Positions 1-64,000 of a stretch of 64,000 nt of DNA are shown in pieces (the first letter of the stretch is position 1; each line of letters begins with the position of its first letter). Location of the stretch: NCBI GenBank assembly GCA_023213395.1, contig CM041465.1, positions 192,517,741-192,581,740 of the forward strand. Direction: 5' to 3'. The DNA comes from Cycas panzhihuaensis. Taxonomy: Eukaryota > Plantae > Cycadophyta. The notes beneath the pieces are model-generated. The model ran no database searches. It worked only from the letters and a program-made list of their open reading frames with translations, and was not told the origin of the DNA. A program made the position numbers and the translations under genes.

Positions 1-3000
1 ATCATCCATCTACTCCTTCTAGTAATTGGTTAGCACTTTCATTAGCTACTTTGATGTCCTTTTGAAATTAGGACCAAAGCCTTACTCTTCATCAAATAGG
101 AAGTTGTAGAGTCTTCCTATGACTTTGTTTGTCACTTTTAAGACTTGGTCCATGCTTCTTCTCTTTGGATGATGACCTACTTTGTGACTTGTTCATTAGT
201 GCCTTGAGACCCCTAGTCCACCTAGAGCTTTTTAAGTTTAGGCCCACTTTTTATGAGGATGTGATTGAGAAATGTTTAGCTTTTCGGTGTATTTGAAATC
301 TTATTAAGGATCAAAAGTTGATGAAACTCTCTATCTCTAAGGATAAATCGGTCTATCTTGAAACCTAAATCTTTTAAGGTGATTGTATCTATGATAATCT
401 TACCTCTGCTATTCAAGCCCTTAAAAGGTTAATCAACACTAAGTTGCATATTAACTCTTCCCTTGCTACCAAAGTTAAGAAGGAAACAAGAGTTGTCCAA
501 TTTGTAGAGTCAAAGAAAGGCCAAACCCCTACCCTCCTCCTCCTAAGAAAATGTCATGGTGCTCTTACCACCAAATTGATATATGTGAATGGAAAGATTA
601 TAACAAGTTTAAGGCCATGTTTCACTATGGTCAAATCGATGATAAGCTTACATTTCGATCGAATCATGATTATTTGAGCCATAAAGACCCACTACTCAAC
701 CATACTAAGAAAGGTCTTAAAGATAAGGGAAATGCCAAATCTAGAGATATTAGGGATGACTCTGATTCAGATACTCATTCCTTGAGTAAAAAGGCCTTCT
801 CCACCTAAATGGGACCCTAAGAAGGATAATGCTCAAACTAAACCTCAACCAAGAGAGGGAGAATCTAAAAAGACCATTAACATGGTGGAAGCAATTAAAT
901 CTCTTTCATCATCTAAACCTATCAATGAAGACCCTCTATCTAAAGATAAACCATAAGATGCCCTTGCATAGTTACTAGTTAAACCCATGATTTTAGGTCT
1001 AGCCCACAATATACCAAAGAGGATTCTTTTCCTCTTGTTAAGGAATTAGAGACGATTTACACTGGAATCTCAATCATGGACCTTCTCAAGAGCTACCCTA
1101 ATCAAAGACAACTCCTCCTTGATATTCTTGGGGTGTGTGAGGCCTAATTCACTTGGCAAACCTAATTTAGTCTTCGGTCCCACAACATTGCCTAGGGAAC
1201 AAGAAAGAAATCATAATGAAACAACCCCATTTTATATTGAGACCATGAAGGAAGACATTAAGATCAAAAGGTGTAATGTGCATGAGGCTTCTCTGGTCAG
1301 CGTTATACCTTTATGCCTTTAAAAAGACCTAGAGATATCAACTTGCAAGATGGTTGAATAGGTTTATTAAAGTTATGGAAAATTTAAAAAACCTTGATTG
1401 GTTAAGTTACCCTTCCACTTACTTTATCCAGTAATATTATTATGGCAGAGGACATTATTGTTGACTTTGATCTTGAATTCAACATGTTACTTGGATGATC
1501 ATGGATCAACCAGATATTAGCAGTCTATTCCCCACTCTTCCATGAGCTCAAATTTATTCATGAAGGTAAGCTCAAAGTTATTAAGTATAAGAACAAACCC
1601 ATCCAAAAATCTATCCCATTGGTGGATGTCATCCTTGAAGAAGGGGAACCCTCCTCCTCATTTGTTTCCTTAGGTTTTGGACAATGTTTTGATATAAAAA
1701 CTACTTCCACATGTAACTCAAGAAGAGGTAAAGCAAGTTTATATGACCACCGTTATTCCTTTCTAGGATTAATTCCCTTTTGATCATGTTAATTCTACTT
1801 TGTCTCCTAACCAAATTAAGGGATATTATTTACTCATTGGCTTCTCTAGCATGCCTATAACATAATTTTCCATTGAGTCTCAATTTATCTTTCTTTCCTA
1901 ACTTGATTGGGACCTCCCTGTCTAAATGCCCCTCTTACGGGAGATAACCACTCTTATTGATATTGTTCCCCACACTCCCATTCCTTCATTACATCGGTCT
2001 CCCACTTCAGACCAACTACTCTATGCTCCTCCCCATGATAAAGATTTAGTCCTTAGAAGTATCTTCCACTTTAACCATTTTGAGAATGATGAGGGTATTC
2101 TTGAACACTTTGAGGGAGTCTCTCCTAATCCCCTATTTAATCATCACAAGGTTGGTTTCACTAAATATATCCAATATGGTTCACCTTTGGTAATAAAAGT
2201 TCTTGACATAACTATTCCTTTTTACCATTTGACCTAATCCTATCTTACTTTGAAGAGGGAAATGTAATACTTGTAGAAGATATTATTGTCATCAACCTTG
2301 GGATTAATGACCAACCTAGGGTAATTAAGGTTAGAGCTAGTTATTCATCCCTTGAGATTCAACAGTTGAAATGCCTCTTTATCAAGTTCTTTTCTATCTT
2401 TGCATGGGTCTATACCAATGTGAAAGGCTTATACCACGATGTTGTAGCTCATAATATTACTACCATCCTTGGGGCCAAACCTAAGTATTAGAAATAAAGG
2501 CCCATTCATCCTTGACTTTCAATTACTATCAAACAAGAAGTTGAGAAACTCCTAAAAGCTAGTTTCATTGAGTCAATAAATTACTCCCAATGGGTATCTA
2601 ATTTTATTCCCATCACCAACAAGTATATATCCATTTACATTTGCATTGACTTTTGTGATGTTAATGATTCTTGCTTAAAGGACAACTTCCCTTTACCACT
2701 CATTGACTAGATTTAGGGCCAAATAACTAGATTCAAAATAATGTCTCTTATGGATGGCTTCTTGGGTTATAACCAAATTCTCATTTCCCTGAGGATCACC
2801 ATAAAATAACCTTCACTATGCTGTGGGGGGCATTTTCCTATAAAGTAATGCCGTCTAGCCTTAAGAATACTAAGGCTACTTACTAGTGGGCTATGATTTT
2901 TATCTTCCATGACCTATTGGGAATTACTATCATAGTCTGCTTAGATTATATTTTGGGATTGTGATGTCATCAAGAGGATCACATTCAGGACCTTAGAACC

Positions 3001-5183
3001 ATTTCTTAGTGTTGTTAAAATTATTAGCTTTGCCTAAATCCCAATAGTGTGTTTTTACGGTCGCCTTTGATAAGATACTCAAAATCATTGTATTAAGAGA
3101 TGGTATTAAAGTTGACCTTAACAAAAACATAACTATTATTGAAATACCTCCACCTCACAATAAAAATAAGTCAAATCCTTCCTTAAAAGGTTTGGGTTCT
3201 TACACCATTTTCTTGCTAACTTTTTTGCCAGTACCAAGCCCCTTACTAATATCCTTAAAATGGATGCTTCCTTTCAATGGATTATGGCCATATAAGAATC
3301 CTTTGATAAAGCTTAAACAAAAATTAATCTCATCCCCAATACATTCCCCACCATACCTTGATAAACCTTTCATTCTTTACAACTCTTCTACTGAGGAGTC
3401 TCTTGGAGTTATGCTAGCTGAAAAAGATGAGTTTGGTTGTGAATAAGCCATTTATTTCATTAGTCATACCTTGGTTATTGTAAAACTAAACTACATCCCA
3501 TTTGAAAAAGAATGCTTGGCCCTAGTTTTTGTAACCAAGAAACTACACCATTGCTTACTAGGCAATACCACCCACATTATTACACAGTTAGACCTAGTCC
3601 ACATGTTACTAACTAAAGCTAATCTAACCAAGCAAGCAAATGGCCCTTATTTTCACAAGAATTTGACTTGCGAATGTTCAATCACAAGTAAAAGAAGGGG
3701 ATGGTAATTATTGAACAACTTACCATAGTGCTTCTCTCTAACAACAATCACATTGCTATTCATGATACCCTTTGAATTAAGTATATTTTTTAAGTCAATG
3801 TTACTCCCAATGAGTTAGACTAGTATAAGGACATCGAGGCTACCTTTTAGATCAAACATATCCTTTGATACCATTTCTAAAAGAGGAATTGAGTTAGGGA
3901 AGTTACATACGATCTCCTCCTTGATGAAGTGCTATATAAGTGTTCTATTAATGGAGTCTTACTATAGTAACTCTCCTCTATAGAGGCTTAACTTATATTG
4001 ATTAAATGGCATGATGGCATATGTGGTGGCTACTTTGGTGGCTAATTTATTAGCTTATGCATCCTACATATATTAGATATTATTGGTTTACCATATTTAA
4101 GGATGTATACCTTCATGTACAAAAATGTGAGCAGTGCCAAGCATACCCCTCATTGATCCATCAACCAACTACACTTTTAAGTTTAATTCTCTATATATGG
4201 CTTTTTTCCCAATGGGGTCTTGACCTCATTAAGAAGATTTATCCTCCATCATTTATAGGTCATAAGCTTATCTTACCGCCATTGAATGTTTCATAAAGTA
4301 TAGTGAGGCGCTTCCCTTGAGCATAATGACTAGGAAGGTGATCGCTACCTTCATCTTTCAATATATTATTTGTAGGTTTAGAGTTTTTGAAGTTATTGTC
4401 ATAGATAATAGAACTCTATTTTGTAACTCCCATGTAGATGAGTTATGTAACAAGTTCTATATTACTTATAGGATGTCATCTCCATATCACCTAGAAGCAA
4501 ATGGTTAGATTAAAGCCTTTAATAAAACATTGGATAGAATTTTAGTTAAGATAGTAGTATTGTCATTGATGTTAGCATGCATAACTCTTTCATGCCTTAT
4601 AGGTATATTGCACCTCCATACAAACTATAATAGGGATGACTATATTTTCTTTAGTCTATGGGATCAAAGTTATCCTCCCATTAGAGGTCAAGATCTCTTC
4701 ACTATAAGTATCACTCAAACACTTCACTGATGAGGAAAGGATGAGGAAAGTAAGACTATTGAAACTTAAAATAATGGATGAGACCTATCTTAAAGCCTAT
4801 TAAAAAAATTTAGCCTAAAAACCTAAGCTTCAATGACCCATGATAGATATTTGTGACCAAAAATTTTATGTGGGAGATAAAGTACTCAAGCTAGAATACC
4901 TTCATGACAAGCAAAGAGAGTTTGACTTTAAATAGATGGATCCTACCTAATAATCAAAGACCTAGATAATGGAGCTTAACACATCTCCACTCTTGAGGGC
5001 CTTGAATTTTAGAAGGCTATCAATTCTTAATTCTTAAAGAAGTACTATGTATAACTTGGTCATGCATCACTTTATAAATGAGCTTAAACTATGACCTCCT
5101 CACCGAAGTTCAATACTTGAAAGGAGCCATACTTAATTATCCTTCCATAGGACATGGGTCTCTTCACTTTGAATTCAAGTATA

Positions 5184-5219
<36 letters not shown>

Positions 5220-8200
5220 TTTTCTAAAAAATATTAAAAATAATAAATTCATAAAACAACAAAAACATGTTTGATTTTAGCTCTTTTTAACTTTGTTCAT
5301 AATCTTGGGTCTCCCAAGACCTTCTAATCCCCAACTCAAGCCAATATGATGGTTTTCAGTTATAGGTCCAAGTAGTTGGCTTCTTCATTTGACACTATAT
5401 CTTACTCAAGTAATTTCTTCTACTTGTAAGTTAGATGTCTCTATTACACATGACCATTCGCACTCATCTTTCTCTTAATTCACTAATCTAGTAAAGAGTT
5501 CCTTTATACCTATTTGACAATTAAAGAATCCTTTAGTTCTTAGTCAAATGATAAAGTCAAACACTTACTAATCTCCTTACTCAACTTTAACAACATATAA
5601 GTTATCATCAAGCTCTCAAGTTACTTAAACATTAGTCATATAATTAGCCTTAGTTTACTTATTTCCCTCTTAATGCATTTTGTGCTCAATGTTGTAGCGA
5701 GAATACTTACATAATCTCTTAGATGATGGCATTCTTTTACTCTTGCAATTTGTATCCATTACTATTGAGCTATTTCTATACAATTAAAATGTTGAAGCTA
5801 ACTCAATCATCTATCATATCCTTTATTACCATTATTTATAGGTCTATCACTTCAAGTTGGGGTATTGATCACTCTCAACATGAGTATAAACTAACTATTC
5901 CCCACAATCGAATAAACTATGGCTCTAAGAAATCCATCCAAAGAATGAGGCTAAATTATGGTGATTATATTTTTTCCTTTAAGACCCCATGCTCTCACTT
6001 GCTCAAGAAATGTAGAATGGTCACTAAATAGATTGAATTATGGTGACTACACCTTTGAAAATCAACCACTAGTGAGGCTAAACTATTGTAAGAATGTTTT
6101 TATACATAGGGTAGTTTGCATTTGTATCCAAAAATAAAATTACTAAAATAAAATGTTAAAAACTCAAAAACTTAGGTGGCTATTTAAGAAGATGGTTTAG
6201 AAGAATAGGTAGGACTTTATTAAGCCCCACAATCAATCTCATCCTCCCTTTCCTTCATCCTTTTCTTATTACTTACATCCTTATACTTTCAAGCAACTCA
6301 ATAAATATGTTAAGTAGCCTATGTTCTTAAATAACTTAGTTTAGACAAGATTGGAAATATTCACCATCTTTCTTTAACTTGTTTATAGAGTTTTCCTTAC
6401 CAAAGGGTAAATGTTTCAATCAATAATATCCCTTTTCAACATTGACTAGGTCTCTTGGATCTTGTTTGTATGAATGTATTATGAGTTAATAGACTACTTG
6501 TCATGAAGATTAGATGATTGCATTCGATTATGCTTATGATTGATTATTATTTCCTATGATGCAAAAATCACAAAAGTGCTTACTAAAATGGTGTACTCTA
6601 GCTTCCTCCCAAGTTGAGCTCCACCTTGATATTATATTTTTGTCATCCTTTTTGATATTTCTTCATTGAATAGTCCATGTTGATCCTCAAATTCCTAGCT
6701 TCACTTCATTATGCTCTTTCAATGACCTCACAATTTACTTTTCATCGGTCATCACCCTATTCTTTTATGAAAATTTAGAAGGAATTATTAGGTTTTCATC
6801 ACTTTTGGCTTGTTATATTTTTCATTATAGGTCATATTTTTGGGCTTACCCAAAAATGTGACTTAATAAAATATGATCTTTGAGTTGGTCATATTTTTAC
6901 TACTTTTGAATGTTGCATTTTTATTATAGTTCATGTTTTTCATTATAGGTCACACTTTTACTTTCTTGCACTAAAAAATCTTGATAAGCTATTTTTCCTA
7001 TTATATAGATATTAGTTTGCAATAAACTATGACCCTACCTTCCTTTGGTTTTCTCATTTTTCCTCCCATTCTTTAGCCTATAAATCTCATTTATTTTCTT
7101 AAGAAAAGAGAGAACTTTATGCAATAAAGTGCTACTAAATTATCATCCTAATCTTTTGACTTCTATCAACCTAACTTAGTGTGATTTTGGATCTTGAAAG
7201 GCTAACATGTGTGCAAGATTTATATACTTATTTACTCTTCTGGTAACGAGTATGTTGGGTTGCAAGGTGCATACTTAAAGGTGTTTTCATAAATTGTCCT
7301 ATTTTTTCCTTAGTTTCTTTTTGGGTATGATTTTCTTTTAAAATTCAAGTTTAGTTTTCATTCTTTTCCTTCATAAGACAAAAGAAAGATACTCTCAAGA
7401 ATAGAGAACTTCCTTCTCAACTCAAGAAAGCTCATTAAGAAAGCCCTAATGCTCATGAGCTCATGAATAAAGAGGAATCCCTCACAGAGTGAGACCTAAG
7501 GTCTTAGACTCTTTTGCCATAGAGTTTTAAGCCTCCTTATTCCTTCATCCTCGCTTTCTTCTTGTTTCTTTTATACATTAAGAAAAAGGAGAAATAAAGA
7601 AAGGTGTAGTGTAAGTAGTAGGTGCATATTTATCTTTTGTATGGGCTATTAATGTTACCAATATTTAGTGCTTACTTTCATTTGCTCAAAGGAAATATCA
7701 ATATCCTTTACATATTGATAAATCATGACAAGAAGAGAACCTCCTCTAGTTACACCTTTATATTGAAAAAAATGAGGTAGGCCATTCTTTAGCTATTATT
7801 TTCTTTTTGGTTCTTCTTTTAACTCAAAATAAAAAAAAGGAAAGGAACAACTGAGAGTCTCTTTAATAGTCCTATTGTTTGGTTTGGTGGCTTTGAAAGG
7901 ATTTCTCTTTTTAAGTAGCCAAGATAATTGTAAGAGCATTTGAAAAATCCCATCATTTCTCTTTAGATGTGTGTTGGGCATAGGTGAATATCATCTTAAA
8001 AAATAAAAAAGAAAAGAAAATGTCATGTATGTATAGGTGCATTAGATAAAGTCATGTTAGCCTAAGTTAGTTTTCTTTAGTATTTTACCTAATTGATTAT
8101 TACTTGTTGTTTATATTTAAAAGAAAACTGCATCCTAGATATGTAATTAGGGCTTAACTTCTCTTGTGTGGTTTACGTAAGTTAGGTCTTGTCCCTTCAT

Positions 8201-9060
8201 TTATGACTTGCTTGATCACTTAAGATTTAGCATCTATGGTGTACAAGCTTGTTCTCTCTTATGGATAAATTCATCCTATCATTAGAGAATTTTTTATCAA
8301 TTAAGACTTGATATCTTTGATATACAAACCTCCTCTTCCTTAGGATTAATTTTTTGTCATGTTTTAAACACTAAAGATCTTAGATTTTTGTCATACGTTA
8401 GGTTGAGAGCGACTCTCTCCTTTCTCTTATATTCACCTCTAACTGCAAGAATCTATTAGAATCATATGCAAGCATCCCCAAGTCATCCATTCTCATGGGT
8501 GGATCATCATCCAATGAGATATTCCCTAATGACTTATCCTTGATGGTGTCATTAATCTAAAGTCCAAGCTCTCCTAGATCTTTACATCTATTAGTCCTTC
8601 TATGCTTTACCTAGATCATCATATATTATTTTCCTTTTAGGTGGGATAGTGGTCTAGGTTAAGGCATCATCTTTAGAGAGATATTGGGGATAGACAAGCG
8701 AAAACTTAGGACATTTATTTGGGTAAAACCCTACGAACCTTTCACATGTTGAAAGTTTATTTGCTATCTTCCCCAAGCTAAAGGGGTCTTATTTGTATTA
8801 TTCACTTAATTTAGATTATCATATTCATTTCTTGATTTGAGTTTATTATGTAAATAATAGAATGGATGAGTAATATTTTGATCTTTCTACTTACCTAACA
8901 CACAACTAAAGATTCATCCCTTCTCCTTAAGGGAAGATTCAAGGATCTAATTAGGTCATTTCACTTTTACCGTTTCCTTCCCTTCCCCTCCTAACCCTCT
9001 CCTTTGCAAGAATCATTCACCTAAATTCTCATTAGTGACTTGCCTTAAGATTTGGCATTA
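1..9060 (+). mobile_element. Degenerate Ty3/Gypsy (non-chromovirus, Tat/Ogre-like) retrotransposon, 3' part: gag end, PR, RT, RH, IN, 3' LTR
   Basis: Motifs DNFPLPLI and MDGFLGYNQI (~2680-2780), LNYIPFEKECLALVF (RH, ~3485), HDGICGG and QWGLDLI..IYPPS (IN, 4010-4250), SSPYHLEANG. Many stops and frameshifts. Confidence 0.9.
6412..9060 (+). repeat. 3' LTR (~2.65 kb) of the Gypsy element, copy A
   Basis: Starts TGTTTCAATCAA after a purine tract (caaagggtaaa). Homologous to 49739-52563 and 60594-63281. Ends gatttggcatta (decayed CA). Confidence 0.85.
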
Positions 9061-10582
9061 ACATATTTACTTGTTGGTGATTTAATAACTTTCTAAGTAT
9101 TATTCTACTTCATAGTAGAGATTGCAACATCTGTTGTTGTTCTCCACTTTTACTCTTAGAAAGTCTTCTCAAAACTCAAAGTCTCATCAACATTAAGTAC
9201 ATCTACCATCAAGTAAAATTAACCATATTAGGTATCATCCTCAATTTTATTTCCCTTTGGTCTTGGGTAACTAAGCTTCTATTACTATTTTTAAGTACTA
9301 CTTAGGGAGTTTCTTGGCAATTGAAGTAACCTTATATTGTATTTTATTATATGATTCCTAAGTATCTTAATATTCCTCCTCCTCATCTTCCATTTCAACT
9401 TTAGCTAATATATTAGCTAGCTTCACTTAGTATTTGGATCAATAAATTATTGCCTCAAAGAATTAAACTTTAGTTGTTTCTTAATCTATTTCCTTTTGTA
9501 TTACTATATCTTTAAAGTGTGTAGGTCAAGATCTCACTTGTTAACTTCTTAAAATATGACATCCCAAGTTGTGTATACCTTTCTAGTTACCAACTCAAAT
9601 ACCTAACTCATTTTTCTTTCGTTTCCATACTTAATAAGGATATACTTATAACTCTTATCATCATTTTTAAAATATTTTTCCTTTATAACATGTAGATCTA
9701 TAATGCTCCTAAAGATTCTAAGATGGTTCACTATTGCCTTTCTCCTTAGTCAAGATTTTTTTGATATCATATTCTAAAATGCCTTTGTTGAATTCTTATT
9801 AACCGAGATATGTTATTATGCAAATAACTTCAATGTAAAAGAATTCATCATTAGCTTGGCCTTTCCAACCAAAGTTTTATTCATCCTCTCATCAACTATA
9901 TTTTCTGAAGTGTGTTTCCTATTAGCTATTTTTATGTCATGGTCCTTACAAAACTAGATAAAGGTATTAAAGGTGTGTTCTTCCCATTATTCGATCTAAG
10001 GATTTTAAACCTTTGATCATTTTTTCCTCCACTTTCACTTTGATCCCTTAAAAGTATCAAAGGTTTGAGATTTCTTCATTATGAGATAAAACTAAACTCT
10101 CCTTGAAAAATCATCAATGAAGGTTAATAAATATCTTACACCTTTGAGTTATATGGTTGGTATTAGACCACAATATCTAAGTGGGTAGGGTTCAACTTTT
10201 AATTGCTCTCTAATCTTTACATTTTATAACTTCTCCTATATTTCTTTCCTATTATATAAGTTTTACAAATAATTTTCATTGGTTTAAGTTCTAGAAGACC
10301 ATGTACTATATTTAATTTATACATTAGATGAAGACAACAGTAATGCAAATGACCCATTCTTTCATGCCATAATTAAAATTTATAAGATGCATTAATGACT
10401 AATATTTTTGGTTTAAAAATTGCCTAAGAGCTTATAAATTCTATTGTCTCTACCACCTTTTATAATAGCTTTCATATCATGGTTGTTGATAATAACCTTT
10501 CTATCCTTGAAAAGAACACTCATACTACTATCTTTAATCTAGTTGACAAAATCAAAATTTTCTTCAATCTTAGTATATATGT

Positions 10583-10861
10583 TGTTAGGATTAGTAATTT
10601 GACAAGCAAATCAAACCCTAATGGTGAGCAACAAAAAATGAAGTATGCACAGAATAGACACCATGTTGGAGAATTGGCCAAAACTCAATTATGAACAAGT
10701 AAGAGTACATACTTATAGTACAACCTCACCACTAGAGAAAGAACCCCATTGGACTACTTAGAGGTGGCACACATATCAAGGTGGCCCACAACTCTAATAC
10801 AATATACAAAAGATAGAGAGAGTTTACATAAGGCTAATGGAATTGAGTATTACACCCAACA
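10583..10861 (-). repeat. 3' LTR of the cargo element
   Basis: TGTTAGGA...CCCAACA; adjacent ttccccca (10862-10869) reads as a polypurine tract on the minus strand. Confidence 0.95.
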
Positions 10862-10914
10862 TTCCCCCATGTAATAGTCAATTACATAAATGTCGTCACT
10901 TCAATGATAAGTTC

Positions 10915-11445
10915 AAGTCTCCAAAAGGTTCTTTGGATCAAAATCATTTCGCACAAAATAAGAAAGCCATTGAAGTCCATATGAAGTAGAGTCCATCTCT
11001 AGGAATGCATGGGTTATCACCGCAACCGCCACTTGATTGGTAGGAACTCCCTCTGTATCGTGGAGCAATCGAGTCGGCAAGAGTAGCTATATAAGGTCCC
11101 ACCCTTGCTCATATGGGAGTGCAAGGAACATATATATAATAAGCACATGGCACATGGCACATGGCAAGAGTCTCCAAAAAGTCTGTTTGGATCATAAATC
11201 TTTCTTGGATCATAAACATTCTTTGGATCATAAACAACTGCCGCCAAGAATAAAAAGCTACTTTGAAGTCCATATGAAGAGGAGTCCATCTAAGGAATGC
11301 ATGGGTTATCACCGCAACCGCCTTGATTGGGTAGGAACTCCCTTTGTATACGTGGAGCAATCGGGGCAAGAGTAGTCGTATAAGGTCCCACCCTTGCTCA
11401 TATGGGAGTGCAAGCGGAAAATATATATGTATAAAGCACATGGCG
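10915..11445 (-). repeat. Two imperfect ~260-290-bp tandem copies of a decayed Copia RT fragment
   Basis: Repeated block gaagtccatatgaag...ataaggtcccacccttgctcatatgggagtgcaag. Minus-strand translation QGWD...IKAVAVITHAFLRWTPLHMDFKVAF resembles Copia RT QGxDY..FAPV...W.LHQMDVK.AF. Confidence 0.7.
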
Positions 11446-11567
11446 AGACAAAGGTAGCTTACGAAAGTGTGTCCTACATCTTCTCAATAGGACTAGCACT
11501 TCTTGACATCTAATGTCCGGAAATACAATGGCACTATGGCCTCAAACATACCACATGGGCTAACAAG

Positions 11568-11704
11568 ATGCCTCATTGGGCTAATCAACTTGCCACCATG
11601 GGCAAAAATAACCCGACATTTGAAATTTTTACATGATGCCTCATTGGGCTAACAACTTGCCACCATGGGCAAAAATAACCGACATGTGAAATTTTTACAT
11701 GATG
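11568..11704. repeat. ~67-bp tandem duplication
   Basis: atgcctcattgggcta...gaaatttttacatg occurs twice in tandem. Confidence 0.9.
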
Positions 11705-12294
11705 AAAATGATATGTGACTTGTGTAGCACATGTGACTCTCTCTCATAAATGAAGTACAATAAGATCACAATGGGTTCTTCAAGAGCTAAAAGGAAGTCC
11801 ATAGTACATGTCATCCCCCCCAATGGGGGTACATTACATCAAGAAAACCTTGAAAGAACAAGATGTGCACTGAAGAAACCGAGAAAAATGAAGATAAATA
11901 GGAACTTATGACTTTGAACTTAAAATTCTCCATGAAAACTCCAAAATATGTCAAATGACTGTCAAATGAAAACTCTCTACATTACGGATCCAACGCATAG
12001 CGATTTAATCGAATCGGACCTCCCAATCTCAAGATACGATGGAAATGTGATAGGTACTCTTTAAGAATCTTTGAAATGGGACGAAATGAAGATTAGCCCC
12101 TTCATGAGTTGGCACAGTCGCATTAAGTCTCCATATGACCGGGGCTAAGTGATGAGGGGCTAGACGGACTTGAAGAGATTATCCAATATAATTAAATCAA
12201 CATTTTCAAACCAAAAAAAATATAACCCTTTTTTAAAACAATTTCACGTCCGCCAAGAATGTAAAAAATAGCCCAAATACTTTTCATAACCCTA

Positions 12295-12695
12295 TTAGGG
12301 TTTATGCAATCGAATAATCGTCGCCTCCATTGAAGATGAAATCTGCAGATTCGAAGATGGGTTGTCGCCATTACAGGTCGACGATGGAGTAGATGAGGGC
12401 GCCATTATTGCGCAGCGAGCCATTCTGTGCAGGTTCGCCATCGAATGCAAATTGTAGGTCAAAGGTTTCTTAACAGTAGATGCAATATCACCAAGGAAGG
12501 AGTTACGGAGAAATCTCTCGCTCGTTACCCGACACAGTAATAAGGAGCTTTGGAGCTCAGCGCGCGATGCACAATGCCAGAACAAGGGTACCCTGGCATC
12601 GATCGACAATCTCAAACAGGGGTCATCATGCCGAAGGCAGAGGTAAAGGCAGAAGTACTGAGCCGCCATAGAGTGAGAGTACGATGGAGAGGAGC
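12295..12695 (-). pseudogene. Second captured fragment: pyrimidine-rich leader, ATGGCG start and Ser/Arg-rich, transit-peptide-like reading frame
   Basis: ctcctctccatcgtactctcactctATGGCGGCT with ATG at 12669. Reads [12 protein letters not shown] (shifted frame) ...ERFLRNSFLG...MARCAIMAPSS. CpG-rich. Donor gene not recognised. Confidence 0.4.
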
Positions 12696-13034
12696 CTTGG
12701 AGCGATTGCAACAGCTGTTCGAGCTCTTGACAAAGTCAATGGCCCCTCCAATAATTAATGCTTGATCTCCCCTTTGAATGTAGGACCGTTGGCTTTCTAC
12801 TTTTTCGATGTTCTTGCAGGCTTTGGATCGTTTCCTCTTCCTTCGCTCCCGAACGACGTCGGTCCTGGTGCTCAATTGGGAGGCGGGATCAACGTTCATT
12901 GACATCCGAGGCTCAGGCGAAGCTACGAAGCCCCCGCCCATGCAATTCTCCAAAGAATTGACGGTGGAAGAGGAATTAGGCTCGCGGGTTGAATCGACAC
13001 CCTCCTCCACTTGCATCCGGTGGAAAGAGTACAT
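12696..13034 (-). pseudogene. Captured, processed fragment of a bHLH subgroup Ia (FAMA/SMF-like) transcription factor with an internal deletion and a frameshift
   Basis: [19 protein letters not shown]|[20 protein letters not shown], then a 1-nt shift into [10 protein letters not shown]. Matches the Ia consensus KRKR..[57 protein letters not shown] without the MTHIA...MPG segment. Confidence 0.9.
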
Positions 13035-13295
13035 ACTTAGAGGAAAAGATCCAGAAACAAGAAGCAATGGAAGCTCTCATTTCCAAGTTTTGTCACTATT
13101 TCTTCTCTCGAAAGCCGCTTATATGACTTCAAGCAACCCACACGTACAATCTCCCTCGTGAGATTATACAACAGACAGTTGAGTCCCAAACTCCTACAGA
13201 CACAACCTCTGCTCCAGAGCTTTAGTGAAAGTAAAAAGTTGAAGACATGACAAAGCTTGGGAAGCTTTCTAACAAGCGAGCCCAACACATAGCGC

Positions 13296-13500
13296 TTTTT
13301 CTTTCTTTCTTTTTTTTTTTTTTTTTTTTTTTTGAAATACATAAGAATATAGGCCAGATTTGAAGGCCTTGAATACAAAATTTTTGAGCATAAGAGAAAT
13401 ACATATCAAAAAATATATGTATAACTCAGAATATGCAAATACTTTTGAAAATAGAGTTTCTTCTAGCTTCCGGATAGCGAGAAGCACTCACTCAGCTAAT
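13296..13500 (-). other. Captured mRNA 3' UTR ending in a poly(A) tract
   Basis: 24 consecutive T at 13310-13333 (A on the element's sense strand), preceded on the minus strand by U-rich 3'-UTR-like sequence. Confidence 0.55.
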
Positions 13501-13890
13501 TAGCAGTTCTGCAACACTACGTCCTTGACATGCGAAGGAAGCGATCAAGCAGAATTGGATGCACAAAGAATTTGGTGGACTTTCACCTGCATGCAATATT
13601 ATTGTGGTACCACATGTGGAGAAGAGGTCCACCCGGCAAGATTGAGGCTTCAAATGACCACAAAACTTCAAAGCGGCTTGAAAGCGACCTCTCATCATCA
13701 CCAAAATAGCCCTTCAAAATTTGATATCAGTCCCATAACAAAATATGCATCAGATATAACTTGAAATGATCTTCAACTTGACGAAGTCACGAAGCGAACA
13801 CATCAAAAATTTACAAGACTTGAAAGCTCAAAAAACAGAAATGACATGTACTAGGACTTTCAAGAAAGGCCTCCAAGGGTTGAACCTTGG

Positions 13891-13902
13891 GCTCTGATAC
13901 CA
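13891..13902 (-). promoter_or_regulatory. Primer binding site (tRNA-iMet)
   Basis: gctctgatacca is the reverse complement of TGGTATCAGAGC and abuts the 5' LTR. Confidence 0.95.
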
Positions 13903-14181
13903 TGTTAGGATTAGTAATTTGACAAGCAAATCAAACCCTAATGGTGAGCAACAAAAGATGAAGTATGCACAGAATAGACACCATGTTGGAGAATTGGCCA
14001 AAACTCAATTATGAACAAGTAAGAGTACATACTTATAGTACAACCTCACCACTAGAGAAAGAACCCCATTGGACTACTTAGAGGTGGCACACATATCAAG
14101 GTGGCCCACAACTCTAATACAATATACAAAAGATAGAGAGAGTTTACATAGGGCTAATGGAATTGAGTATTACACCCAACA
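13903..14181 (-). repeat. 5' LTR of the cargo element
   Basis: 277/279 identical to 10583-10861. Confidence 0.95.
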
Positions 14182-15299
14182 TATGTTACCTCCTCGATGT
14201 AGTCATCTTCCTATTAGGTGTGATCAATAAGACCTTATTCCCTCTACTTTCAATACCTTATTATCTCCTAATATTATAATCTACCTATTTGCTTGCTTCC
14301 CACATGTGTCTAAACCATCCAATCTTGAATTCCATGTGTCTAAAATCCCTTAAATTAATGTACTAGATATCATATGCTCTTGGGCATGTTTATGAAGGTA
14401 CCATGAAGATTTTTTATCCCTTGTTAGTTGAGTTAGTTGATTAATTAGAAATGTGCCCTACCTATAATTTCTTCCCTATTTTTCTTGATATCCCTTCTTC
14501 TCTTGATCAACCTATCACTTCTTATAATCTCTCTTGAAATGGCCTAACTTATTACAATAATATCATAGCTTTGGTTACCCCTTTCGAGTAAACTATGCTA
14601 TCATTGAAACTCATTCTTCTTTCAAATGAAAGATTTCTTCCTCTTTGACTATAGTAGAAAAACATTAAAATATTCCTTAATAATTTTATGCTTCAATATT
14701 TGCTCATATTATAATAACAATATCTCTAACTTATTAAATGTGATATTTTTTATTTTCTCTGTAAGAAAAAATTCATCATAGAAATTTTCAACCTCTTTAA
14801 TTAACTCCTTAATACCACAATAATCATACCCTTATCATCCATAATCTTCTTATTATTCTCTAATTTATTTCTAATTCCTTTTACCATTTGGAGATGTTTA
14901 ACCATTTAACCCATCATCCTTTGACTATAAAGTTGATTCTTTAAAATCATAATCCTTGTATCACTTTTTTCTCAAAGATAGGCATGATAGTATCCCATGA
15001 TTCCTTAGGTGTATTCATCTTCTAACATTTTCCACTAGAGCTCCATTGATGGACATGTTTATTAAACCTAAGATGAAGTCACTTTTGCCCTCAAACTTTG
15101 CATTTTCATGAGAAGTGATTATCTTTTCATCTAGTATAGGTACCTTACCTTATAAAATTTACCACAAGCTATTCATGTGGAGTAAATTGGTCATCTAGTG
15201 CTTCTTAGTGCCCTAGCTTTTAGTACTAATTGATTTATTTATCTAGGAGTTAAACACGTTTCCACCTAGTATGTTTATTACCTAGGGGGTAAGCACTTC

Positions 15300-16915
15300 C
15301 TGAAGAATGAGGTTGGGGGGGGTTTCTGGATCCCCCATTTGGAATGCTCTCTTGTCCTCAAGACCTATCCTGAGCAATGACTTATGTTAGAAACCGGAGA
15401 ATGGTGAAAGTATAAGATTTTGGGAGGACAAATGGTGTGGCCCCTCCAAATTGGGTGAGTCACCATCTATTGGTAATCTGTAGAGGTGCAGTGAGGATTC
15501 ATATGGCCCACTTATCAAGCACTCGGGAAGGACAAGATAAGAATAGGAAATTGAGAAAGTTTGATGATCTGCGGGGTTTTGAGGAGGAGATTCGGATCAT
15601 TAAGGAGGTATTACACCAACAAGATATTCCTAAGAGGACTCCTCCGGATACCCTAATTTAGTCCTTTTACTTTCGGGTCTGCTCGGTTAAGGACATTTAT
15701 AATTCATGATGATGAGAGAAGGTTGGGCTAAGGGCGATATCTTTGGCGGGGGTTTGGAAATTGGGGCTTATACCAAAGATAGCTACTTTTTGGTGGCTAT
15801 GTCTACAAAATAAGCTTCTAACAATAAAGAACCTCCTAAAACATGGTTTTTATTTGGCGAATAGATGCAAGTTATGTAGGAGGGAGGTCGAGTTCTTAAA
15901 CCACCTCGGTATCCATTGCCCCTACTGGGGGATCTAGGGTGGCTTCGTCCAAACTGGGAATAATATGGGTTTCTTCTAAGTCTTTGAGGGATTAATGGCT
16001 AACATGAAAATCTCCATTCAAGAGTAAAATGCTAGGTAGGTTATGGAATCTAATTCTCCGGTAGGAACTTGGCATATATGGAAGGAGTGTAATAGGAGAA
16101 TTTTCTAAGGTAAAGAGTTAGGCGATTAGAGACTCTTTGATAAGATCGGAAGGGCATCTTAGAGATGTTAAAACCCTTAAAGGAGGGTAGGATTCTAAGG
16201 GGAAGACAACATCCTACATGATTAAGGTATCTATTACACGGCGGGAGGGAATGTAAAGAGGAGGAAAACTATTTGGACACCTCCACGAAGAAACACGGAT
16301 CAAAATTAATTTTGACGGTGCAACTAAAGGCAACCCTAGGGAGGCTGGGGCAAGAGGTCTGTGCAGGAATCATGTTGGGACGGTGAAGTGGGCATTTCAA
16401 TCGAATCATAAAATGGAGGTAAAGGCTATGCAAATGGCGGTAGCCATGGTGGATGAGGAGGAGGAACAGAAAGTGATTATAGAAGGTGACTCCCTGAATG
16501 TGATTAGGAGCTTAAAGGGAGAGATGAAGGTGGAATGGAGCATTGTGGATCTTATTAGGGATGCACAGGACGTCCTGAGCTCCAACCAGAGCGTTTAGAT
16601 ATAATAAACATACAGGGAAGGAAATGCGACGGCGACCTGGTTGGCAAATTGGGTAGTGTTAAATAACAGGAATAAGGTATGGAAAGAGAACTTCCCAGAT
16701 GAGCTATTGAGTCTGGTCAGGATAGACTTCTCTAGACTTAATGAGGGGATGGATAGGAGAGGGTGAGCGAGTGATTTTTGGATTGGTTAGGCCATGGGCT
16801 TATCATGGCCATCTCACTCTAATAGGTTGGCTTTTGATGTAAAAGGTTTAGGGACTGTTAAAACCCCTTCTAATATTATTTTACCTTACCAAAATAAATA
16901 AATAAATAAATAAAA
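15300..16915 (+). mobile_element. 5'-truncated plant L1 LINE (ORF2 C-terminus: zf-RVT plus RNase H), degenerate
   Basis: NGESIRFWEDKW; PKIATFWWLCLQNKLLT..NL.KHG...NRCKLC..E.E.LNHL.IHCP; IKINFDGATKGNP; EGDSLNVI; YREGNA. A-rich (AAAT)n tail at 16891-16915. Confidence 0.88.
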
Positions 16916-17365
<450 letters not shown>

Positions 17366-18754
17366 CACATAAAATTAGGTGTTAAATAGTCCTAATATAC
17401 TATATATTAATATTTTTATTATTTTTTAGTTATTTTAATATCTTTGATCACATACATACCATTAAAAAATAGAAAATAACATGGACACCATGTAGGAAGT
17501 TGGAAAATTCTTATGTGACCTCTACAAAATGATAAAGAATTACAAATTACAAATCCTAATGCTTTAAGAATTTTGACTAGGTTGTTATATAAGTTATAAA
17601 TGGCTTTAGTACCTTATGATCCCACGAGACCAAGTGGCGCTTATTTAGAGGTTAACTATTAGATTCAAAATAAGAATAACATATAATTTAATGTATTGGA
17701 CTATAGGAAATTGAAAAATAAATTTTATCAAATGTTTTGAATGGTGAATATTCAGGCAATTCTTTTTATGTTTTCAAAATTTTGGTGAACTTTATACAAC
17801 TTTTGAATTTATGATTTGTCTCTTTAAATCATATCAACTACCATGGATACTCAAATTCTTTTCCTCATCTTTGAATTTTAAGATTTATGTGGTTTATTTA
17901 GCCTTTAATCTTTATTTAGCTTTGAACTTTTTATTTGCATATTGCTAATCATGTTATTAATATGCAACATTTAACACTTCTCATAACTTAATATTTGGTG
18001 TTTCAACACATGAATCTACATTTGATCTTTAGTAATGATCTTGATCTTCATGGATCTAACATCTCATTACAACCCATGAACTAACACAATCAACTCATAT
18101 TTTGGGCCCTATTGTTGATAAATTTAACTTTGAAATATTTGTGTCCTACCATAGATTCATTCCCTAGTGTTGATCTTTATTTATTTTCTTGAGCTTATAA
18201 ATTTATTGGGTGTTTATCTAATAATGCCCAATAAGTCTTCAAATGATCTAGCATTTTACATCTTTAAATATTCTTAGAGTTGGTATAATAACTTGGATTT
18301 ATTTATGACTTTGAAAACCCTATAATGAATTAAAAATGACCCATAAACCATAATTCCTTCTTTGAAAAATTTGAGAAAGATTCATAAACCCTACTCATAA
18401 ATGATAAAATAAAGTTTGGCATTGTGGCTTAAATTAACAGCATAACAAAGCCCTAACCCACAAAGTCATTCAATAAGAAAATAGAGTATAATTCCTCTTC
18501 ATCATAATAATTTTATATTAAAAAATATATATCTATAAAATAAACAAGATACCTCAAAAACTTCTCTAAAATCATTAAAAGGCCCTCTGATTACTTCCAA
18601 TAACCACCATAATTCTCCACTAAACTATTAATTTAAAAAATAAATTTCTCTTAATACTTATCACCATAATATACCTAGCTAAAAAAATTAATTGAATTTG
18701 CTTGCACCTCACATCCCTTTCAAAATTACCTCCTTTCACCGCTTTAATATGAAA

Positions 18755-49738: not shown

Positions 49739-52563
49739 TGTTTCAATCAACAACGTCTTCTTTTGACATTAGCAAATGCTCTTGCTTTATCTCATTTATT
49801 GCTGGGACTTATTTTTATGAATGTATTATGAGTTAATAGATTGCTTGGCATGAAAATTAGATGATTGCATTCTCATTACACTTATGCTTAATTATTACTA
49901 CCTATGATGCAAAGATCGCAAAAGTTCTTACTAAAATGGCATACTCCAACTTCCACCAAAGCTCAGCTCCATATTACACTATTTTATCATCCCTTGTTTG
50001 ATATTTCTTCATCCAATAGTCATTGTTAATCCTCAAATTCCTAGCTTCACTCTATTTTACCCTTTTGATAACCTTATAGTTCACTTTTTTAGCAATTATT
50101 ACCCTTGTTCTTTTTTTTTTTTTAAGGAATTATTAGTTTGCCATCACTTTTTGGTTTGTCACATTTTACACTATAGGTCACATTTTTGGTCCTACCTAAA
50201 AACACAACTTACTTAATAAATACGATCTTTGAGTTAGTCATATTTTTAGTACTTTTATATGTCACATTTTTCACTATAGCTTACATTTTTTTAGTATAGA
50301 TCATGTTTTTCACATTTCTATATAAAAAAGAATAATAATAGCAAGTCATTTTTTCCCATCATATGGATATTAGTTTGCAGGAAACTACAGCTCCATCTTC
50401 CCCTAATTTTCTCACTTCTTCCTCCTATTCTTTAACCTATAAATCTCACTCATCTTCTTAAGAAAGTAAGAGAGAAATTTGTGTAATGAGGTGTTGTTAG
50501 ATTATCACCCCAACCTTTGTGACTTCTATCAACCCAGCTTGGTATGATTTTGGAGCTTAAAGAGCTAACATGGCGGTAAGATTTACAAAGCTAAAAACTA
50601 CACCTCTCTAACTTTAGCTTATTTCTCTTCTTATTCCCCTTCTCCTCCTCATATTCCTTCTTCACTCTCTCAAGCATACTTTCTCCTTCTTAAGGGTCTT
50701 TATTTCTCTTATTAAAATGTATGCTTGTTCACTCTTATGGTAATGAGTATGTTGGCTTGTAAGGTGGATATCTAGAGGTGTTGAAATAAATCCTCCTAAT
50801 TTTTTCCTTGGTTTCTTTTTTTAGTGTGATTTTATTTTTAAATTCAAGTTTAGTTTTCCTTTCTTTTCCCTTTATAAGATAAAGGAATGATACTCTCAAG
50901 ATTGGAGACCTTCCCTCTCAAATTAAGAAAGCTCACTAAGAAAGCCCTAGTGCTAATGAGCTTATTAGTAAAAGAGGAGTCTCCCTTGTAGAGTGAGACC
51001 TAAGGAGGTCTTGGACTCTTTTTCCATAGAGTTTTGAGCCTCTTTATTCCCTCACCCTTGCTTAATTCTTATTGCCTTTATAGACATTAAAAAAAAGAGA
51101 AAAAAATAAAGATGTAGTGTAACCAGTAGGTGCATGTTTATCTTTTGTTTGGGCTATTAGCACTAGACACATTTGGTACTTGCTTTTATTTGCTTAAAAT
51201 AATAATCAATATCCTTCTATGTATATTAGTGAATTATGACAAGAAGTAAACCTCTTTTAATTACACCTTCACATTGAAAAGAATATGAGGCAACCCATTC
51301 TTTAGTTATTATTTTCTTTCTTCTTCTTCTTTTGGCTCAAAAAAAAATTTGAAAGAAACAAGTAAGAGTCTCTTTAATAGTCCCATTGTTTAGCTTCAAG
51401 GCTTTGAACGGATTTCTCTTTTAAGTAGCAGAGATAAATGTAAGAGCATTTTAAAGAACCGATTATTTTTTTTTTAGATGTATGTTGGGCATAGGTGAAT
51501 ATCATTTTAAACAACAAAAAGAAAGAAAGAAAAAAAGTAAAGGGTATATATGCATAGGTACATTAGATGAAGTCATATTAGCCTAAGTTAATTTTCTTTT
51601 AGTATTTTATCTGATTGATTGTTTCTTGTCATTTGCATTCAAAAGAAAATTATATCCTAAATCTACATTTAGGGATTGATTTATCTTGTGTGATCCCCCT
51701 AAGTTAGGTCTTATCCCTTTATTTAGGACTCGCTTGATCACTTAAGACTTAATATCCCTAGTATATAAGCTCGTCCTCTCTTAGGGGTAAATACCTCCTA
51801 TTGCTAAAGGACTTTTGATCAACTAGGACTTGATACCCTTGACATATAAACCTCATCTTCATCAAGATTGATTTTTCTATCATGTTCTACATAGTAGAGG
51901 TGTTGACTTGCAATCACACTTCAGGTTGAGAGTAACCCTGTCTTCTCCCCTACATTCACCTTTAAGTGCAAGAACTCGTTAAAATTAGATGTGGACATCC
52001 TTAAACTATCCATCCTCATAGGTGGATCATCATCAAGTGAGAGAGTCCCTAATGATTGACCCCCATAGGGTCATTAGTCTAAGGTCTAAGCTCTCCTGGG
52101 TCCTTGCACTTATCAATCCCCTTGTGCGTTAGCTACATCATCATAGATTATTTTCCTTTTAAGTGTGATAATGGTCTAAGTTAGGGCATCATCTTTAGAG
52201 AGAGATTATAGGTAGATGAAAAGGAAAGCTTAGGACATTTATTAGGTATGGACTCCCATGATCCTTCCATATATTAGAAGTTTATTTGTTATGTTCCCTA
52301 AGCTAAAGGAGGTCTTATTTGTGTTGTTTGCTTGATTTGGATTATCATATTCATTGCTTGATTTAAGTTTGTTATGTAAATAGTAGAATAAATAAATACT
52401 ACTTTGATCTTTCCACTTACTAGATACATGATTATAGAGTCATCCCTTCTCCTTCAGGAAAGGGTCGAGGATCCACTCAAGTCATTTCACCTTTACCCCC
52501 TCTCCTTTATAAGAATCATTCACCCAAGGTCTCATTGGTGACTTGCCTCGAGATTTGATATCA
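49739..52563 (+). repeat. 5' LTR (~2.8 kb) of the Gypsy element
   Basis: TGTTTCAATCAA...GATTTGATATCA, followed by a decayed PBS-like tagtgacca. Clearly diverged from the 3' LTR and has an extra ~150-bp segment (~50580-50720). Confidence 0.85.
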
Positions 52564-63281: not shown

Positions 63282-64000
63282 ACATATTTACTTGTTAGCG
63301 ATTTAATAACTTTCCAAGTATTATTCTACTTCATAGTAGAGATTTCAACATCTATTGTTATTCTCCACTTTTACTCTTAGAAAGTCTCCTCAAAACTCAA
63401 AGTCTCATCAACATTAAGTACATCTACCATCAAAGCAAAATTAACCATATTAGGTCTCATCCTCAATTTTTATTTCCCTTTGGTCTTGGGTAACTAAGCT
63501 TCCATTACTATTTTTAAGTACTACTTAGGGAGTTTCTTGGCAATTGAAATAACCTCATATTGTATTTTATTATATGATTCCTAAGTATCTTAATATTCCT
63601 CCTCCTCATCTTCCATTTCAACTTTAGTTAATATATTACCTAGCTTACCGTTAGTCTTTGGATCAATAAATTATTACCTCAAAGAATTAAACTTTAGTTG
63701 TGTCTCAATCTATTTCCTTTTGTATTACTATATCTTTAAAGTGTTTAGGTCAACATCTCACTTGTTAACTTCTTAAAATATGACATCCCAAGTTGTGTAT
63801 ACCTTTCTAGTTACCAACTCAAATACCTAACTCATTTTTCTTTCATTTCCATACTTAATAAGGATATACTTATAACTCTTATCATCACTTTTTAAATATT
63901 TTTCCTTTATAACATGTAGATCTATAGTGCTCCTAAAGATTCTAAGATGGTTCACTATTGCCTTTCTCCTTAGTCAAGATTTTTTTGATATCATATTCTA
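63282..64000 (-). mobile_element. Continuation of the interrupted Copia (RT start and integrase C-terminus)
   Basis: KW.I.ID.EISTM..NNTWKVIKSLTSK joins VIKCKWVY at 49738 once the Gypsy is removed. Confidence 0.88.

What the first reader, a model, noticed from the sequence alone, without database searches (positions are those of the whole stretch)
10583..14181. Young non-autonomous LTR retroelement acting as a multi-gene mRNA-capture vehicle
Seen: all cis signals are intact (279-bp LTRs with 2 mismatches, TATGT TSD, iMet PBS, PPT) but no gag/pol ORF. The interior is a sense-oriented chain of leader, polyadenylated 3' end, 5' UTR plus Ia bHLH fragment, second ATG-initiated fragment, and duplicated RT relic. 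Established: LTR elements can transduce spliced host mRNAs by RT template switching (e.g. maize Bs1). Inference: this is a recently mobile Copia-derived 'pack' family, mobilised in trans, that has captured up to three transcripts including a developmental regulator. It is the best candidate for an undescribed system in this window.
Basis: partly seen in the sequence, partly recalled or inferred. Interest (0 to 1): 0.92.

Follow-up and report, generated by a model that had tools for sequence, protein, structure and literature searches.

The report
Young LTR element carrying bHLH fragment
A recently inserted, protein-less LTR retrotransposon from a very abundant plant (probably gymnosperm) repeat family carries about 1 kb of low-copy host sequence, including a spliced, broken piece of a bHLH transcription-factor gene; this is a clean example of a known process, not a new kind of system.

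Summary
The structure is real. Two 279-bp LTRs (10583-10861 and 13903-14181) differ at 2 sites and are flanked by a TATGT duplication. The element lies on the minus strand, with an iMet-type primer site at 13890-13902. Contigs from two related organisms carry the exact empty site, so this is a young, genuine insertion.

No gag, pol or RT remnant was found in 30 stop-free pieces, so the "RT relic" is unsupported.

Summed contig depth in related species splits the interior. Two arms are very high-copy: 10862-12238 and about 13334-13902. The centre, about 12239-13291, sits at roughly single-copy depth.

Only 12694-13010 of that centre can be identified. It is an internal fragment of a group Ia bHLH gene; database names for its closest homologues are bHLH57, 67 or 94. 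It lacks the conserved loop intron, has an exact 27-codon gap (basic region and helix 1), and has a frameshift.

The "second ATG-initiated fragment" starts as helix 2 of the same gene, and the rest has no homologue. The "5' UTR" cannot be the canonical one, and the sequence before the poly(A) is family leader.

Best reading: LTR-mediated retroposition (Bs1-like), mobilised in trans. This is a new member of a known kind. First-stage notes list many similar cargo elements elsewhere in this genome; none has been checked.

The parts
10578..10582 (.). Target-site duplication TATGT (left copy)
   Evidence: Identical 5-mer at 14182-14186. The empty-site joint 10576->14181 skips 3604 nt, which equals the element plus one TSD.
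10583..10861 (-). 3' LTR in element sense (279 bp, TG..CA)
   Evidence: 277/279 identical to 13903-14181. Very high summed contig depth in three organisms.
10862..10870 (-). Short polypurine tract (GGGGGAA on the minus strand), directly upstream of the 3' LTR
   Evidence: Read directly from the sequence. Only 7 purines, so the call is weak.
10871..12238 (-). 3' arm: non-coding, high-copy family interior. Contains tandem duplications 10929-11151/11219-11444 and 11563-11638/11631-11704.
   Evidence: Depth is 10^3-10^4 at 10863-11931 and 10^2-10^3 at 11932-12253. Contigs from two organisms stop matching at 12233 and 12238. Duplications. No Pfam domains.
12239..12693 (.). Cargo piece D: unidentified sequence, GC 43-50%, single-copy depth over 12415-12693 and somewhat repeated over 12239-12414
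   Evidence: Depth falls to single-copy level. The 138-aa minus-strand ORF has no homologue. A plus-strand 52-aa peptide has only a weak formyltransferase-motif hit with no support. Rfam found nothing.
12694..13010 (-). Processed internal fragment of a group Ia bHLH gene. It starts mid-CDS at 'EEG', has an exact 27-codon gap at 12785|12786 (basic region plus helix 1 missing), a 1-nt frameshift near 12725-12728, and ends after [10 protein letters not shown].
   Evidence: phmmer best hit is Ginkgo Gb_17233, E 7e-13. tblastn to gymnosperm bHLHs gives 68 identities over the 92 ungapped columns (about 74%). The profile matches only positions 186-260 and 288-318. The conserved IQR|GDQ intron is absent.
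13025..13039 (-). 15-nt stretch identical to the LTR (10701-10715 / 14021-14035, the TATA-like part of the LTR), lying between cargo piece U and the bHLH fragment
   Evidence: the repeat finder D6. None of 1000 dinucleotide shuffles reached 15 nt; the maximum was 13. A contig of run X16 stops matching exactly at 13039.
13040..13291 (.). Cargo piece U: unidentified low-copy sequence upstream (element sense) of the bHLH fragment. Not the canonical bHLH N-terminus or 5' UTR.
   Evidence: No match to the bHLH profile N-terminus. No Pfam hit. Low depth, and a diverged homologue sits in a contig of the possible RNA run X16.
13292..13333 (-). A-rich run in element sense (24 pure A at 13310-13333, then an AG-rich tail) at the leader/cargo boundary
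   Evidence: Read directly from the sequence. Read laying skipped 13292-13343 as a repeat.
13334..13889 (-). 5' arm or leader: non-coding repeated family sequence
   Evidence: Depth in X1 is about 66,000 next to the PBS, falling to about 2,000 at 13381-13541. Contigs cover 13350-13488. No Pfam domains.
13890..13902 (-). Primer-binding site TGGTATCAGAGCC (minus strand), abutting the 5' LTR
   Evidence: Read directly from the sequence. The motif is described as a conserved plant LTR-element PBS with tRNA complementarity.
13903..14181 (-). 5' LTR in element sense (279 bp), with a TATA-like CTATAAG at LTR position 144
14182..14186 (.). Target-site duplication TATGT (right copy)

Best explanation
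This is a 3,599-bp non-autonomous LTR retrotransposon on the minus strand. It belongs to a very abundant family shared by several related species.

Layout in element sense: 5' LTR, iMet-type PBS, a repeated leader ending in an A run, about 1.05 kb of low-copy cargo, a repeated non-coding 3' arm, a short PPT, and the 3' LTR.

The cargo holds a processed but defective internal piece of a group Ia bHLH gene, flanked by two unidentified low-copy pieces.

The most likely origin is LTR-mediated retroposition. During reverse transcription inside a virus-like particle, the enzyme switched from element RNA to co-packaged host RNA(s) and back. The resulting chimera was later copied again as a pseudo-element, using proteins from an autonomous relative.

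Shown: the insertion is young (LTRs 99.3% identical, intact TSD) and is absent from two related organisms. Shown: a version of the bHLH piece with the same 27-codon gap exists at about 93% identity in an organism that lacks this insertion.

Inferred from that: the chimera, or a donor that was already deleted, is older than this insertion. Also inferred: the template-switch mechanism and mobilisation in trans.
For: - Structure: LTRs, TSD and PBS are as described.
- Empty site: contigs in X1 (organism A) and X4 (organism B) join 10576 to 14181, skipping 3604 nt. Their flanks are about 96.5% identical to the window.
- Copy number contrast: summed contig depth of the LTRs and arms is 10^3-10^4, against about 5-30 for 12415-13058. 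Contigs from two organisms leave the element at 12233 and 12238.
- No coding capacity: no retroelement domains in any frame.
- bHLH identity.
- Splicing: four independent isoforms or fragments (Welwitschia P0073, P0084, P0110, P0108) place an intron between 'SYIQR' and 'GDQAS'. The cargo is contiguous across that point.
- Possible donor: in organism A, a 98.5% identical contig stops matching at 12787, which is the gap junction.
- Older deleted copy: in the same organism, a 163-nt contig at 92.6% identity with no gaps crosses the junction to 12760.
- Switch footprint: a 15-nt LTR-identical stretch sits at an internal cargo junction, p<0.001 by shuffling.
- Precedent: the mechanism, partial and multi-gene capture, and secondary retroposition are all described.
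Against: - Only one intron position could be tested, and it was inferred from protein isoforms rather than from the donor's genomic sequence.
- No donors were found for pieces U and D, so the cargo may contain intronic or intergenic DNA.
- The A run lies 5' of the cargo in element sense. A simple two-switch capture of a polyadenylated mRNA does not predict that. It needs either a prematurely polyadenylated leader RNA as the last template, or a family-intrinsic A-rich tract.
- Microsimilarity at the arm/cargo switch points could not be tested without a cargo-less family copy and the donor.
- No autonomous partner was seen.
- The contig evidence is fragmentary, and no run contains the whole element. 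The assembly of the interior is therefore not independently confirmed by reads.
Confidence: 0.65

Rival explanations
1. One-off chimera. The host RNAs were captured in the same retrotransposition event that produced this copy, so no older cargo-carrying lineage exists.
For: The cargo sits at about single-copy depth in related organisms. A 98.5% identical contig in organism A could be the donor. The LTRs are nearly identical.
Against: Contigs at 89-93% identity in organism A cross the 27-codon gap junction. A 93% contig in organism B spans the helix-2/piece-D junction. Both organisms lack this insertion and differ by only about 3.5% in the flanks. The junctions therefore look older than this copy.
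Confidence: 0.15
2. DNA-level acquisition. The low-copy centre entered an existing element copy by nested insertion, filler DNA during double-strand-break repair, or gene conversion, and was only afterwards retrotransposed.
For: Pieces U and D have no recognisable coding content and could be intronic or intergenic DNA. No poly(A) tail lies at the 3' end of the cargo.
Against: The bHLH fragment lacks the conserved loop intron. There is no TSD or terminal structure of a nested element around 12239-13291. The 15-nt LTR-derived stretch at an internal junction fits reverse-transcriptase template jumps better.
Confidence: 0.12
3. Assembly artefact, or a chance arrangement of repeats.
For: No sequencing run examined spans the element.
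Against: The LTRs are 279 bp and 99.3% identical. A perfect 5-bp TSD flanks them, and the PBS abuts the LTR. Contigs from two independent studies carry a precise empty site with a single TSD copy.
Confidence: 0.02

Closest known systems
Bs1 of maize (LTR retroelement with transduced fragments of three host genes)
   Same: LTR-flanked element without its own pol. It carries partial, intron-less host gene fragments in its interior, and copies share switch points and were retroposed again.
   Different: Only one donor family is identified here. No chimeric ORF is intact, because of the frameshift and the missing basic region and helix 1. No gag remnant was seen. The host is probably a gymnosperm.
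LTR-mediated retrocopies (Tan et al. 2016, PMC5131818; rice/sorghum 'captured genes', PMC3726574)
   Same: An internal partial retrocopy replaces element interior between two LTRs. Multi-template chimeras and de novo or filler bases occur at switch points. The loci behave as non-autonomous LTR elements.
   Different: Microsimilarity at the switch points could not be measured here. The carrier is itself a high-copy non-coding family rather than a truncated autonomous element.
TRIM / LARD non-autonomous LTR elements (for example Veju long variants, Cassandra)
   Same: No coding capacity and the same TGGTATCAGAGC-type PBS. Extra sequence introduced by aberrant template switching is described for Veju.
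   Different: At 3.6 kb with 279-bp LTRs, the size falls between the two classes. There is no 5S-like LTR (Rfam negative), so it is not Cassandra.
Pack-MULE / Pack-CACTA (DNA transposons carrying gene fragments)
   Same: Non-autonomous vehicle with constant ends and host gene fragments inside.
   Different: Those capture at the DNA level and retain introns. Here the fragment is spliced and the vehicle is an RNA-intermediate element.

Membership tests
LTR retrotransposon (structural definition) | Two direct LTRs ending TG..CA | tested here: met
   279 bp each, 277/279 identical.
LTR retrotransposon (structural definition) | 4-6 bp target-site duplication and an empty site elsewhere | tested here: met
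   TATGT on both sides. Empty-site contigs in X1 and X4.
LTR retrotransposon (structural definition) | tRNA primer-binding site next to the 5' LTR, and a PPT next to the 3' LTR | tested here: met
   A 13-nt iMet-type PBS abuts the LTR on the minus strand. The PPT is only 7 purines, so that half is weak.
Ty1/Copia superfamily | pol domain order PR-IN-RT-RH, or RT phylogeny | not testable with these tools
   No pol remnant in any frame. The iMet PBS is shared with TRIMs and, from general knowledge, with many Gypsy lineages, so 'Copia-derived' stays unproven.
Non-autonomous LTR element (TRIM/LARD-like) | No gag or pol coding capacity, with intact cis signals | tested here: met
   30 stop-free pieces plus the cargo ORFs carry no retroelement domains.
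LTR-mediated retrocopy / Bs1-type transduction | Host-gene-derived sequence inside the element | tested here: met
   Group Ia bHLH homology at 12694-13010.
LTR-mediated retrocopy / Bs1-type transduction | Captured sequence lacks the donor's introns | tested here: met
   The cargo is contiguous across the conserved IQR|GDQ intron site. That site was inferred from four intron-retaining isoforms or fragments.
LTR-mediated retrocopy / Bs1-type transduction | A separate donor locus exists | tested here: inconclusive
   A 98.5% identical contig in organism A diverges exactly at the gap junction. Its sequence could not be read. Donors of U and D were not found.
LTR-mediated retrocopy / Bs1-type transduction | Microsimilarity or filler at template-switch points | tested here: inconclusive
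   A 15-nt LTR-identical stretch lies at an internal junction, p<0.001. The arm/cargo junctions are untestable without a donor and a cargo-less copy.
Group Ia bHLH transcription factor (functional gene) | Complete basic-helix-loop-helix domain plus the C-terminal ACT-like domain | tested here: not met
   Basic region and helix 1 are absent, there is a frameshift in helix 2, and no C-terminal domain is present. Pfam HLH is not detected.

The most novel reading that the evidence does not exclude
This element may be one instance of a genome-wide class. In that class, abundant non-coding LTR families in this large, probably gymnosperm, genome have constant arms and a central slot behind the leader. 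The slot repeatedly acquires and propagates different host mRNA fragments, making a retro-element analogue of Pack-MULEs that operates at scale. The internal A run and the LTR-derived filler would then be signatures of a preferred switch site.
Probability: 0.2. Interest if true: 0.6.

Novelty: new member of a known kind. Interest (0 to 1): 0.3.

Why it matters
This is a well-delimited case with a TSD, an empty site, and a clear contrast between repeated arms and low-copy cargo. It shows LTR-mediated capture and onward transport of a spliced host gene fragment in a lineage where such events are little documented.

The carried bHLH piece cannot encode a working transcription factor, so a direct functional effect is unlikely. 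The value is as a marker of recent retrotransposition, and as a seed for a genome-wide census of cargo-bearing LTR elements. First-stage notes suggest these are frequent in this genome.

Tried and rejected
**Readings rejected**
- 'RT relic' in the tandem duplication: no Pfam hit in any frame.
- 'Second gene' read from the 138-aa ORF: no homologue among 5.8 billion proteins, and its N-terminus is bHLH helix 2.
- bHLH C-terminal (ACT-like) homology in 12239-12693: I saw apparent motifs by eye (SPxY..S.AQ, DIAS.V). The profile search found nothing beyond position 318, and the two weak resemblances lie in the wrong order.
- Exon skipping as the cause of the 27-codon gap: the conserved intron lies 5 codons downstream of the gap's 3' edge.
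- Cassandra or other structured RNA in the element: Rfam found nothing and no tRNA genes were found.

**Inconclusive**
- Plus-strand peptide 12299-12454 resembles a formyltransferase motif (Pfam E 0.011, PDB E 0.6). NCBIfam, the ESM Atlas and a word-based search gave nothing.
- Plus-strand peptide 12458-12643 has a weak match to a serine-carboxypeptidase motif (E 0.55), which I treat as chance.

**Searches that found nothing**
- Other family copies: none in the window, none in metagenome contigs, none in viral contigs, and none by sequence in the scan's notes.

- Read laying allowed one call, so the contig sequences at the junctions could not be read.
Full report
**Observation**

The window holds a direct repeat of 279 bp at 10583-10861 and 13903-14181. 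It differs at two A/G sites (10637/13957 and 10831/14151) and starts TG and ends CA. TATGT flanks it on both sides, at 10578-10582 and 14182-14186.

The element lies on the minus strand. The reverse complement of 13890-13902 reads TGGTATCAGAGCC and abuts the right-hand LTR. This is the standard plant LTR-element primer site; papers on Copia elements and Cassandra TRIMs use the same 12-mer. On the same strand a short purine run (GGGGGAA) precedes the other LTR. No other copy of any part lies in the window.

**Proof of transposition and age**

Logan contigs of four public runs were laid on 10000-14800. Contigs from organism A (595 nt) and organism B (1003 nt) run from 10348-10576 straight into 14181 onwards. 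They skip 3604 nt, which equals the element plus one TSD copy. Their flanks differ from the window by about 3.5%.

The insertion is thus absent from two related taxa. The LTR divergence (0.72%) is several times smaller than that flank divergence. With the conifer rate commonly used for LTR dating (about 2.2e-9 per site per year, from general knowledge), this gives roughly 1-2 million years.

No run held the whole element; the best held 0.29 of the sampled words. The interior arrangement therefore rests on the assembly.

**No coding capacity**

All ORFs and all 30 stop-free pieces of at least 38 aa in the non-cargo interior gave no gag, protease, integrase, RT or RNase H hit, on either strand. 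Some family copies in organisms A and B lack one unit, and the same holds for the 67-bp duplication at 11563-11704.

Superfamily assignment (Copia) is untestable here. Rfam found no 5S or other RNA family.

**Arms versus cargo**

Summed contig depth in organisms A, B and D splits the interior.
- It is 10^3-10^4 over the LTRs, over 10862-11931 and over 13542-13902.
- It is 10^2-10^3 over 11932-12253 and 13381-13541.
- It drops to the level of the single-copy flanks over 12415-13058: about 8-30 in X1 and 2-7 in X4.

Two contigs from different organisms match up to 12233 and 12238 and then continue with unlike sequence. That sets one cargo boundary at about 12238|12239. The other boundary falls in the A-rich tract 13292-13333, which the tool skipped as a repeat.

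The element therefore consists of constant repeated arms around about 1.05 kb of low-copy sequence. The inner parts of the arms are shared by only a subfamily.

**The bHLH piece**

A search of 1.8 billion representative proteins with the 151-aa ORF (13067..12612, minus strand) gave group Ia bHLH proteins. The best hit was Ginkgo Gb_17233. Gymnosperm relatives from Pinus, Cryptomeria, Taxus and Welwitschia were recovered.

Sources name the close homologues bHLH57, bHLH67 or bHLH94. On those database names the fragment looks closer to the bHLH57/67/94 group than to FAMA, but no phylogeny was run to test this.

Homology is confined to 13010..12694.
- It starts mid-protein, at EEG, about residue 173 of 456.
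- It is about 74% identical over the 92 ungapped columns (68 identities).
- It lacks exactly 27 codons, covering the basic region and helix 1, between ESQR and SYIQR (12786|12785).
- It shifts frame by one nucleotide after FVK.
- It ends after [10 protein letters not shown].
- The N-terminal part and the C-terminal ACT-like domain are absent.

1. The 'second ATG-initiated fragment' (ORF 12711..12295) begins as helix 2 of the same gene. Its remainder has no homologue.
2. The sequence upstream of the fragment cannot be the canonical 5' UTR.
3. The ORF cannot encode a bHLH factor.

**Spliced or not**

Three intron-retaining isoforms diverge immediately after SYIQR with a valine: Welwitschia P0073, P0084 and the Pinaceae-like P0110. 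One fragment, P0108, begins just before GDQAS. Together they indicate a conserved phase-0 intron between IQR and GDQ. The cargo reads SYIQRGDQ without interruption, so it derives from spliced RNA at the one site that can be tested.

The 27-codon gap ends 5 codons before this intron. It is therefore a deletion or template jump, not exon skipping.

**History of the chimera**

The contigs give three pieces of evidence.
- In organism A, a contig 98.5% identical to 12787-12922 stops matching exactly at the gap junction. It is a candidate donor.
- In the same organism, a 163-nt ungapped contig at 92.6% and another at 88.6% continue across the junction.
- In organism B, a 93% contig spans the helix-2/piece-D junction.

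These copies are more diverged than the orthologous flanks, and they occur in organisms that lack this insertion. The gapped, fused structure is therefore probably older than this copy. This fits repeated retroposition of a cargo-bearing lineage, as described for Bs1 and for Drosophila retrocopies. An already deleted donor would also fit. The evidence consists of a few short contigs and should be treated as suggestive.

**Junction details**

A 15-nt stretch at 13025-13039 is identical to the LTR's TATA-like region, in the same orientation. None of 1000 dinucleotide shuffles reached that length. It lies between piece U and the bHLH fragment. A contig of the possible RNA run X16 that is homologous to U stops matching exactly at 13039. 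This looks like a footprint of a multi-template reverse-transcription product.

The 24-nt A run lies 5' of the cargo in element sense, directly after the repeated leader. It is therefore not the cargo's poly(A) tail. It could be the tail of a prematurely polyadenylated leader RNA used as the last template, or an A-rich tract native to the subfamily. I could not decide between these.

**Unidentified pieces**

Pieces U (13040-13291) and D (12239-12693) gave no convincing protein, Pfam, NCBIfam, PDB, Atlas or Rfam match. A plus-strand peptide in D resembles a formyltransferase motif weakly. 'Multi-gene' capture is therefore possible but unproven. Only one donor family is established.

**Comparison and verdict**

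The literature already describes the following:
- capture of partial mRNAs by LTR elements through template switching;
- chimeras of several donors;
- filler at switch points;
- further retroposition of the chimera as a pseudo-element.

The examples are Bs1, rice and sorghum surveys, and retrocopies from Drosophila to mammals. This element fits that kind in every feature that could be tested. The untested features are microsimilarity at the outer junctions, the donors of U and D, and the autonomous partner. It is a new member of a known kind.

The scan's first-stage notes list many other cargo-bearing non-autonomous LTR elements elsewhere in this genome. None has been checked. If they hold up, the genome-wide pattern would be more interesting than this single copy.

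**Limits**

Only one read-laying run was allowed. Scans of metagenome and viral contigs found no family copies.

Noticed in passing
window 1-9726 and 54165-63950: A direct repeat of at least 9.7 kb, 93-100% identical, with about 54.17 kb spacing. It runs to the window's end, so its true length is unknown. A third, more diverged partial copy lies at about 50700-52500. The position homologous to the insertion site would fall just beyond the window, so I could not see whether the second copy is empty.
   Followed up: no
window 16863-17370: Dense short-period (8-14 nt) tandem repeat with strong G-over-C skew. It creates spurious ORFs on both strands.
   Followed up: no
window 13025-13039 vs 10701-10715 / 14021-14035: A 15-nt exact match between the cargo and the TATA-like part of the LTR. 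It is not expected by chance (0 of 1000 shuffles). Possibly a template-switch footprint.
   Followed up: partly
window 10929-11444 and 11563-11704: Two internal tandem duplications of the 3' arm (about 290 bp and about 67 bp). They are polymorphic among family copies in related organisms, where contigs skip one unit.
   Followed up: partly
window 12299-12454 (+): A stop-free 52-aa plus-strand peptide with a weak formyltransferase-like motif (G..DxGxIIAQ). It lies antisense to the element. Other libraries do not support it.
   Followed up: yes
window 12290-12300: A telobox-like AAACCCTAA motif (minus strand) inside cargo piece D, near its end. This motif is typical of plant promoter or 5' UTR regions.
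   Followed up: no
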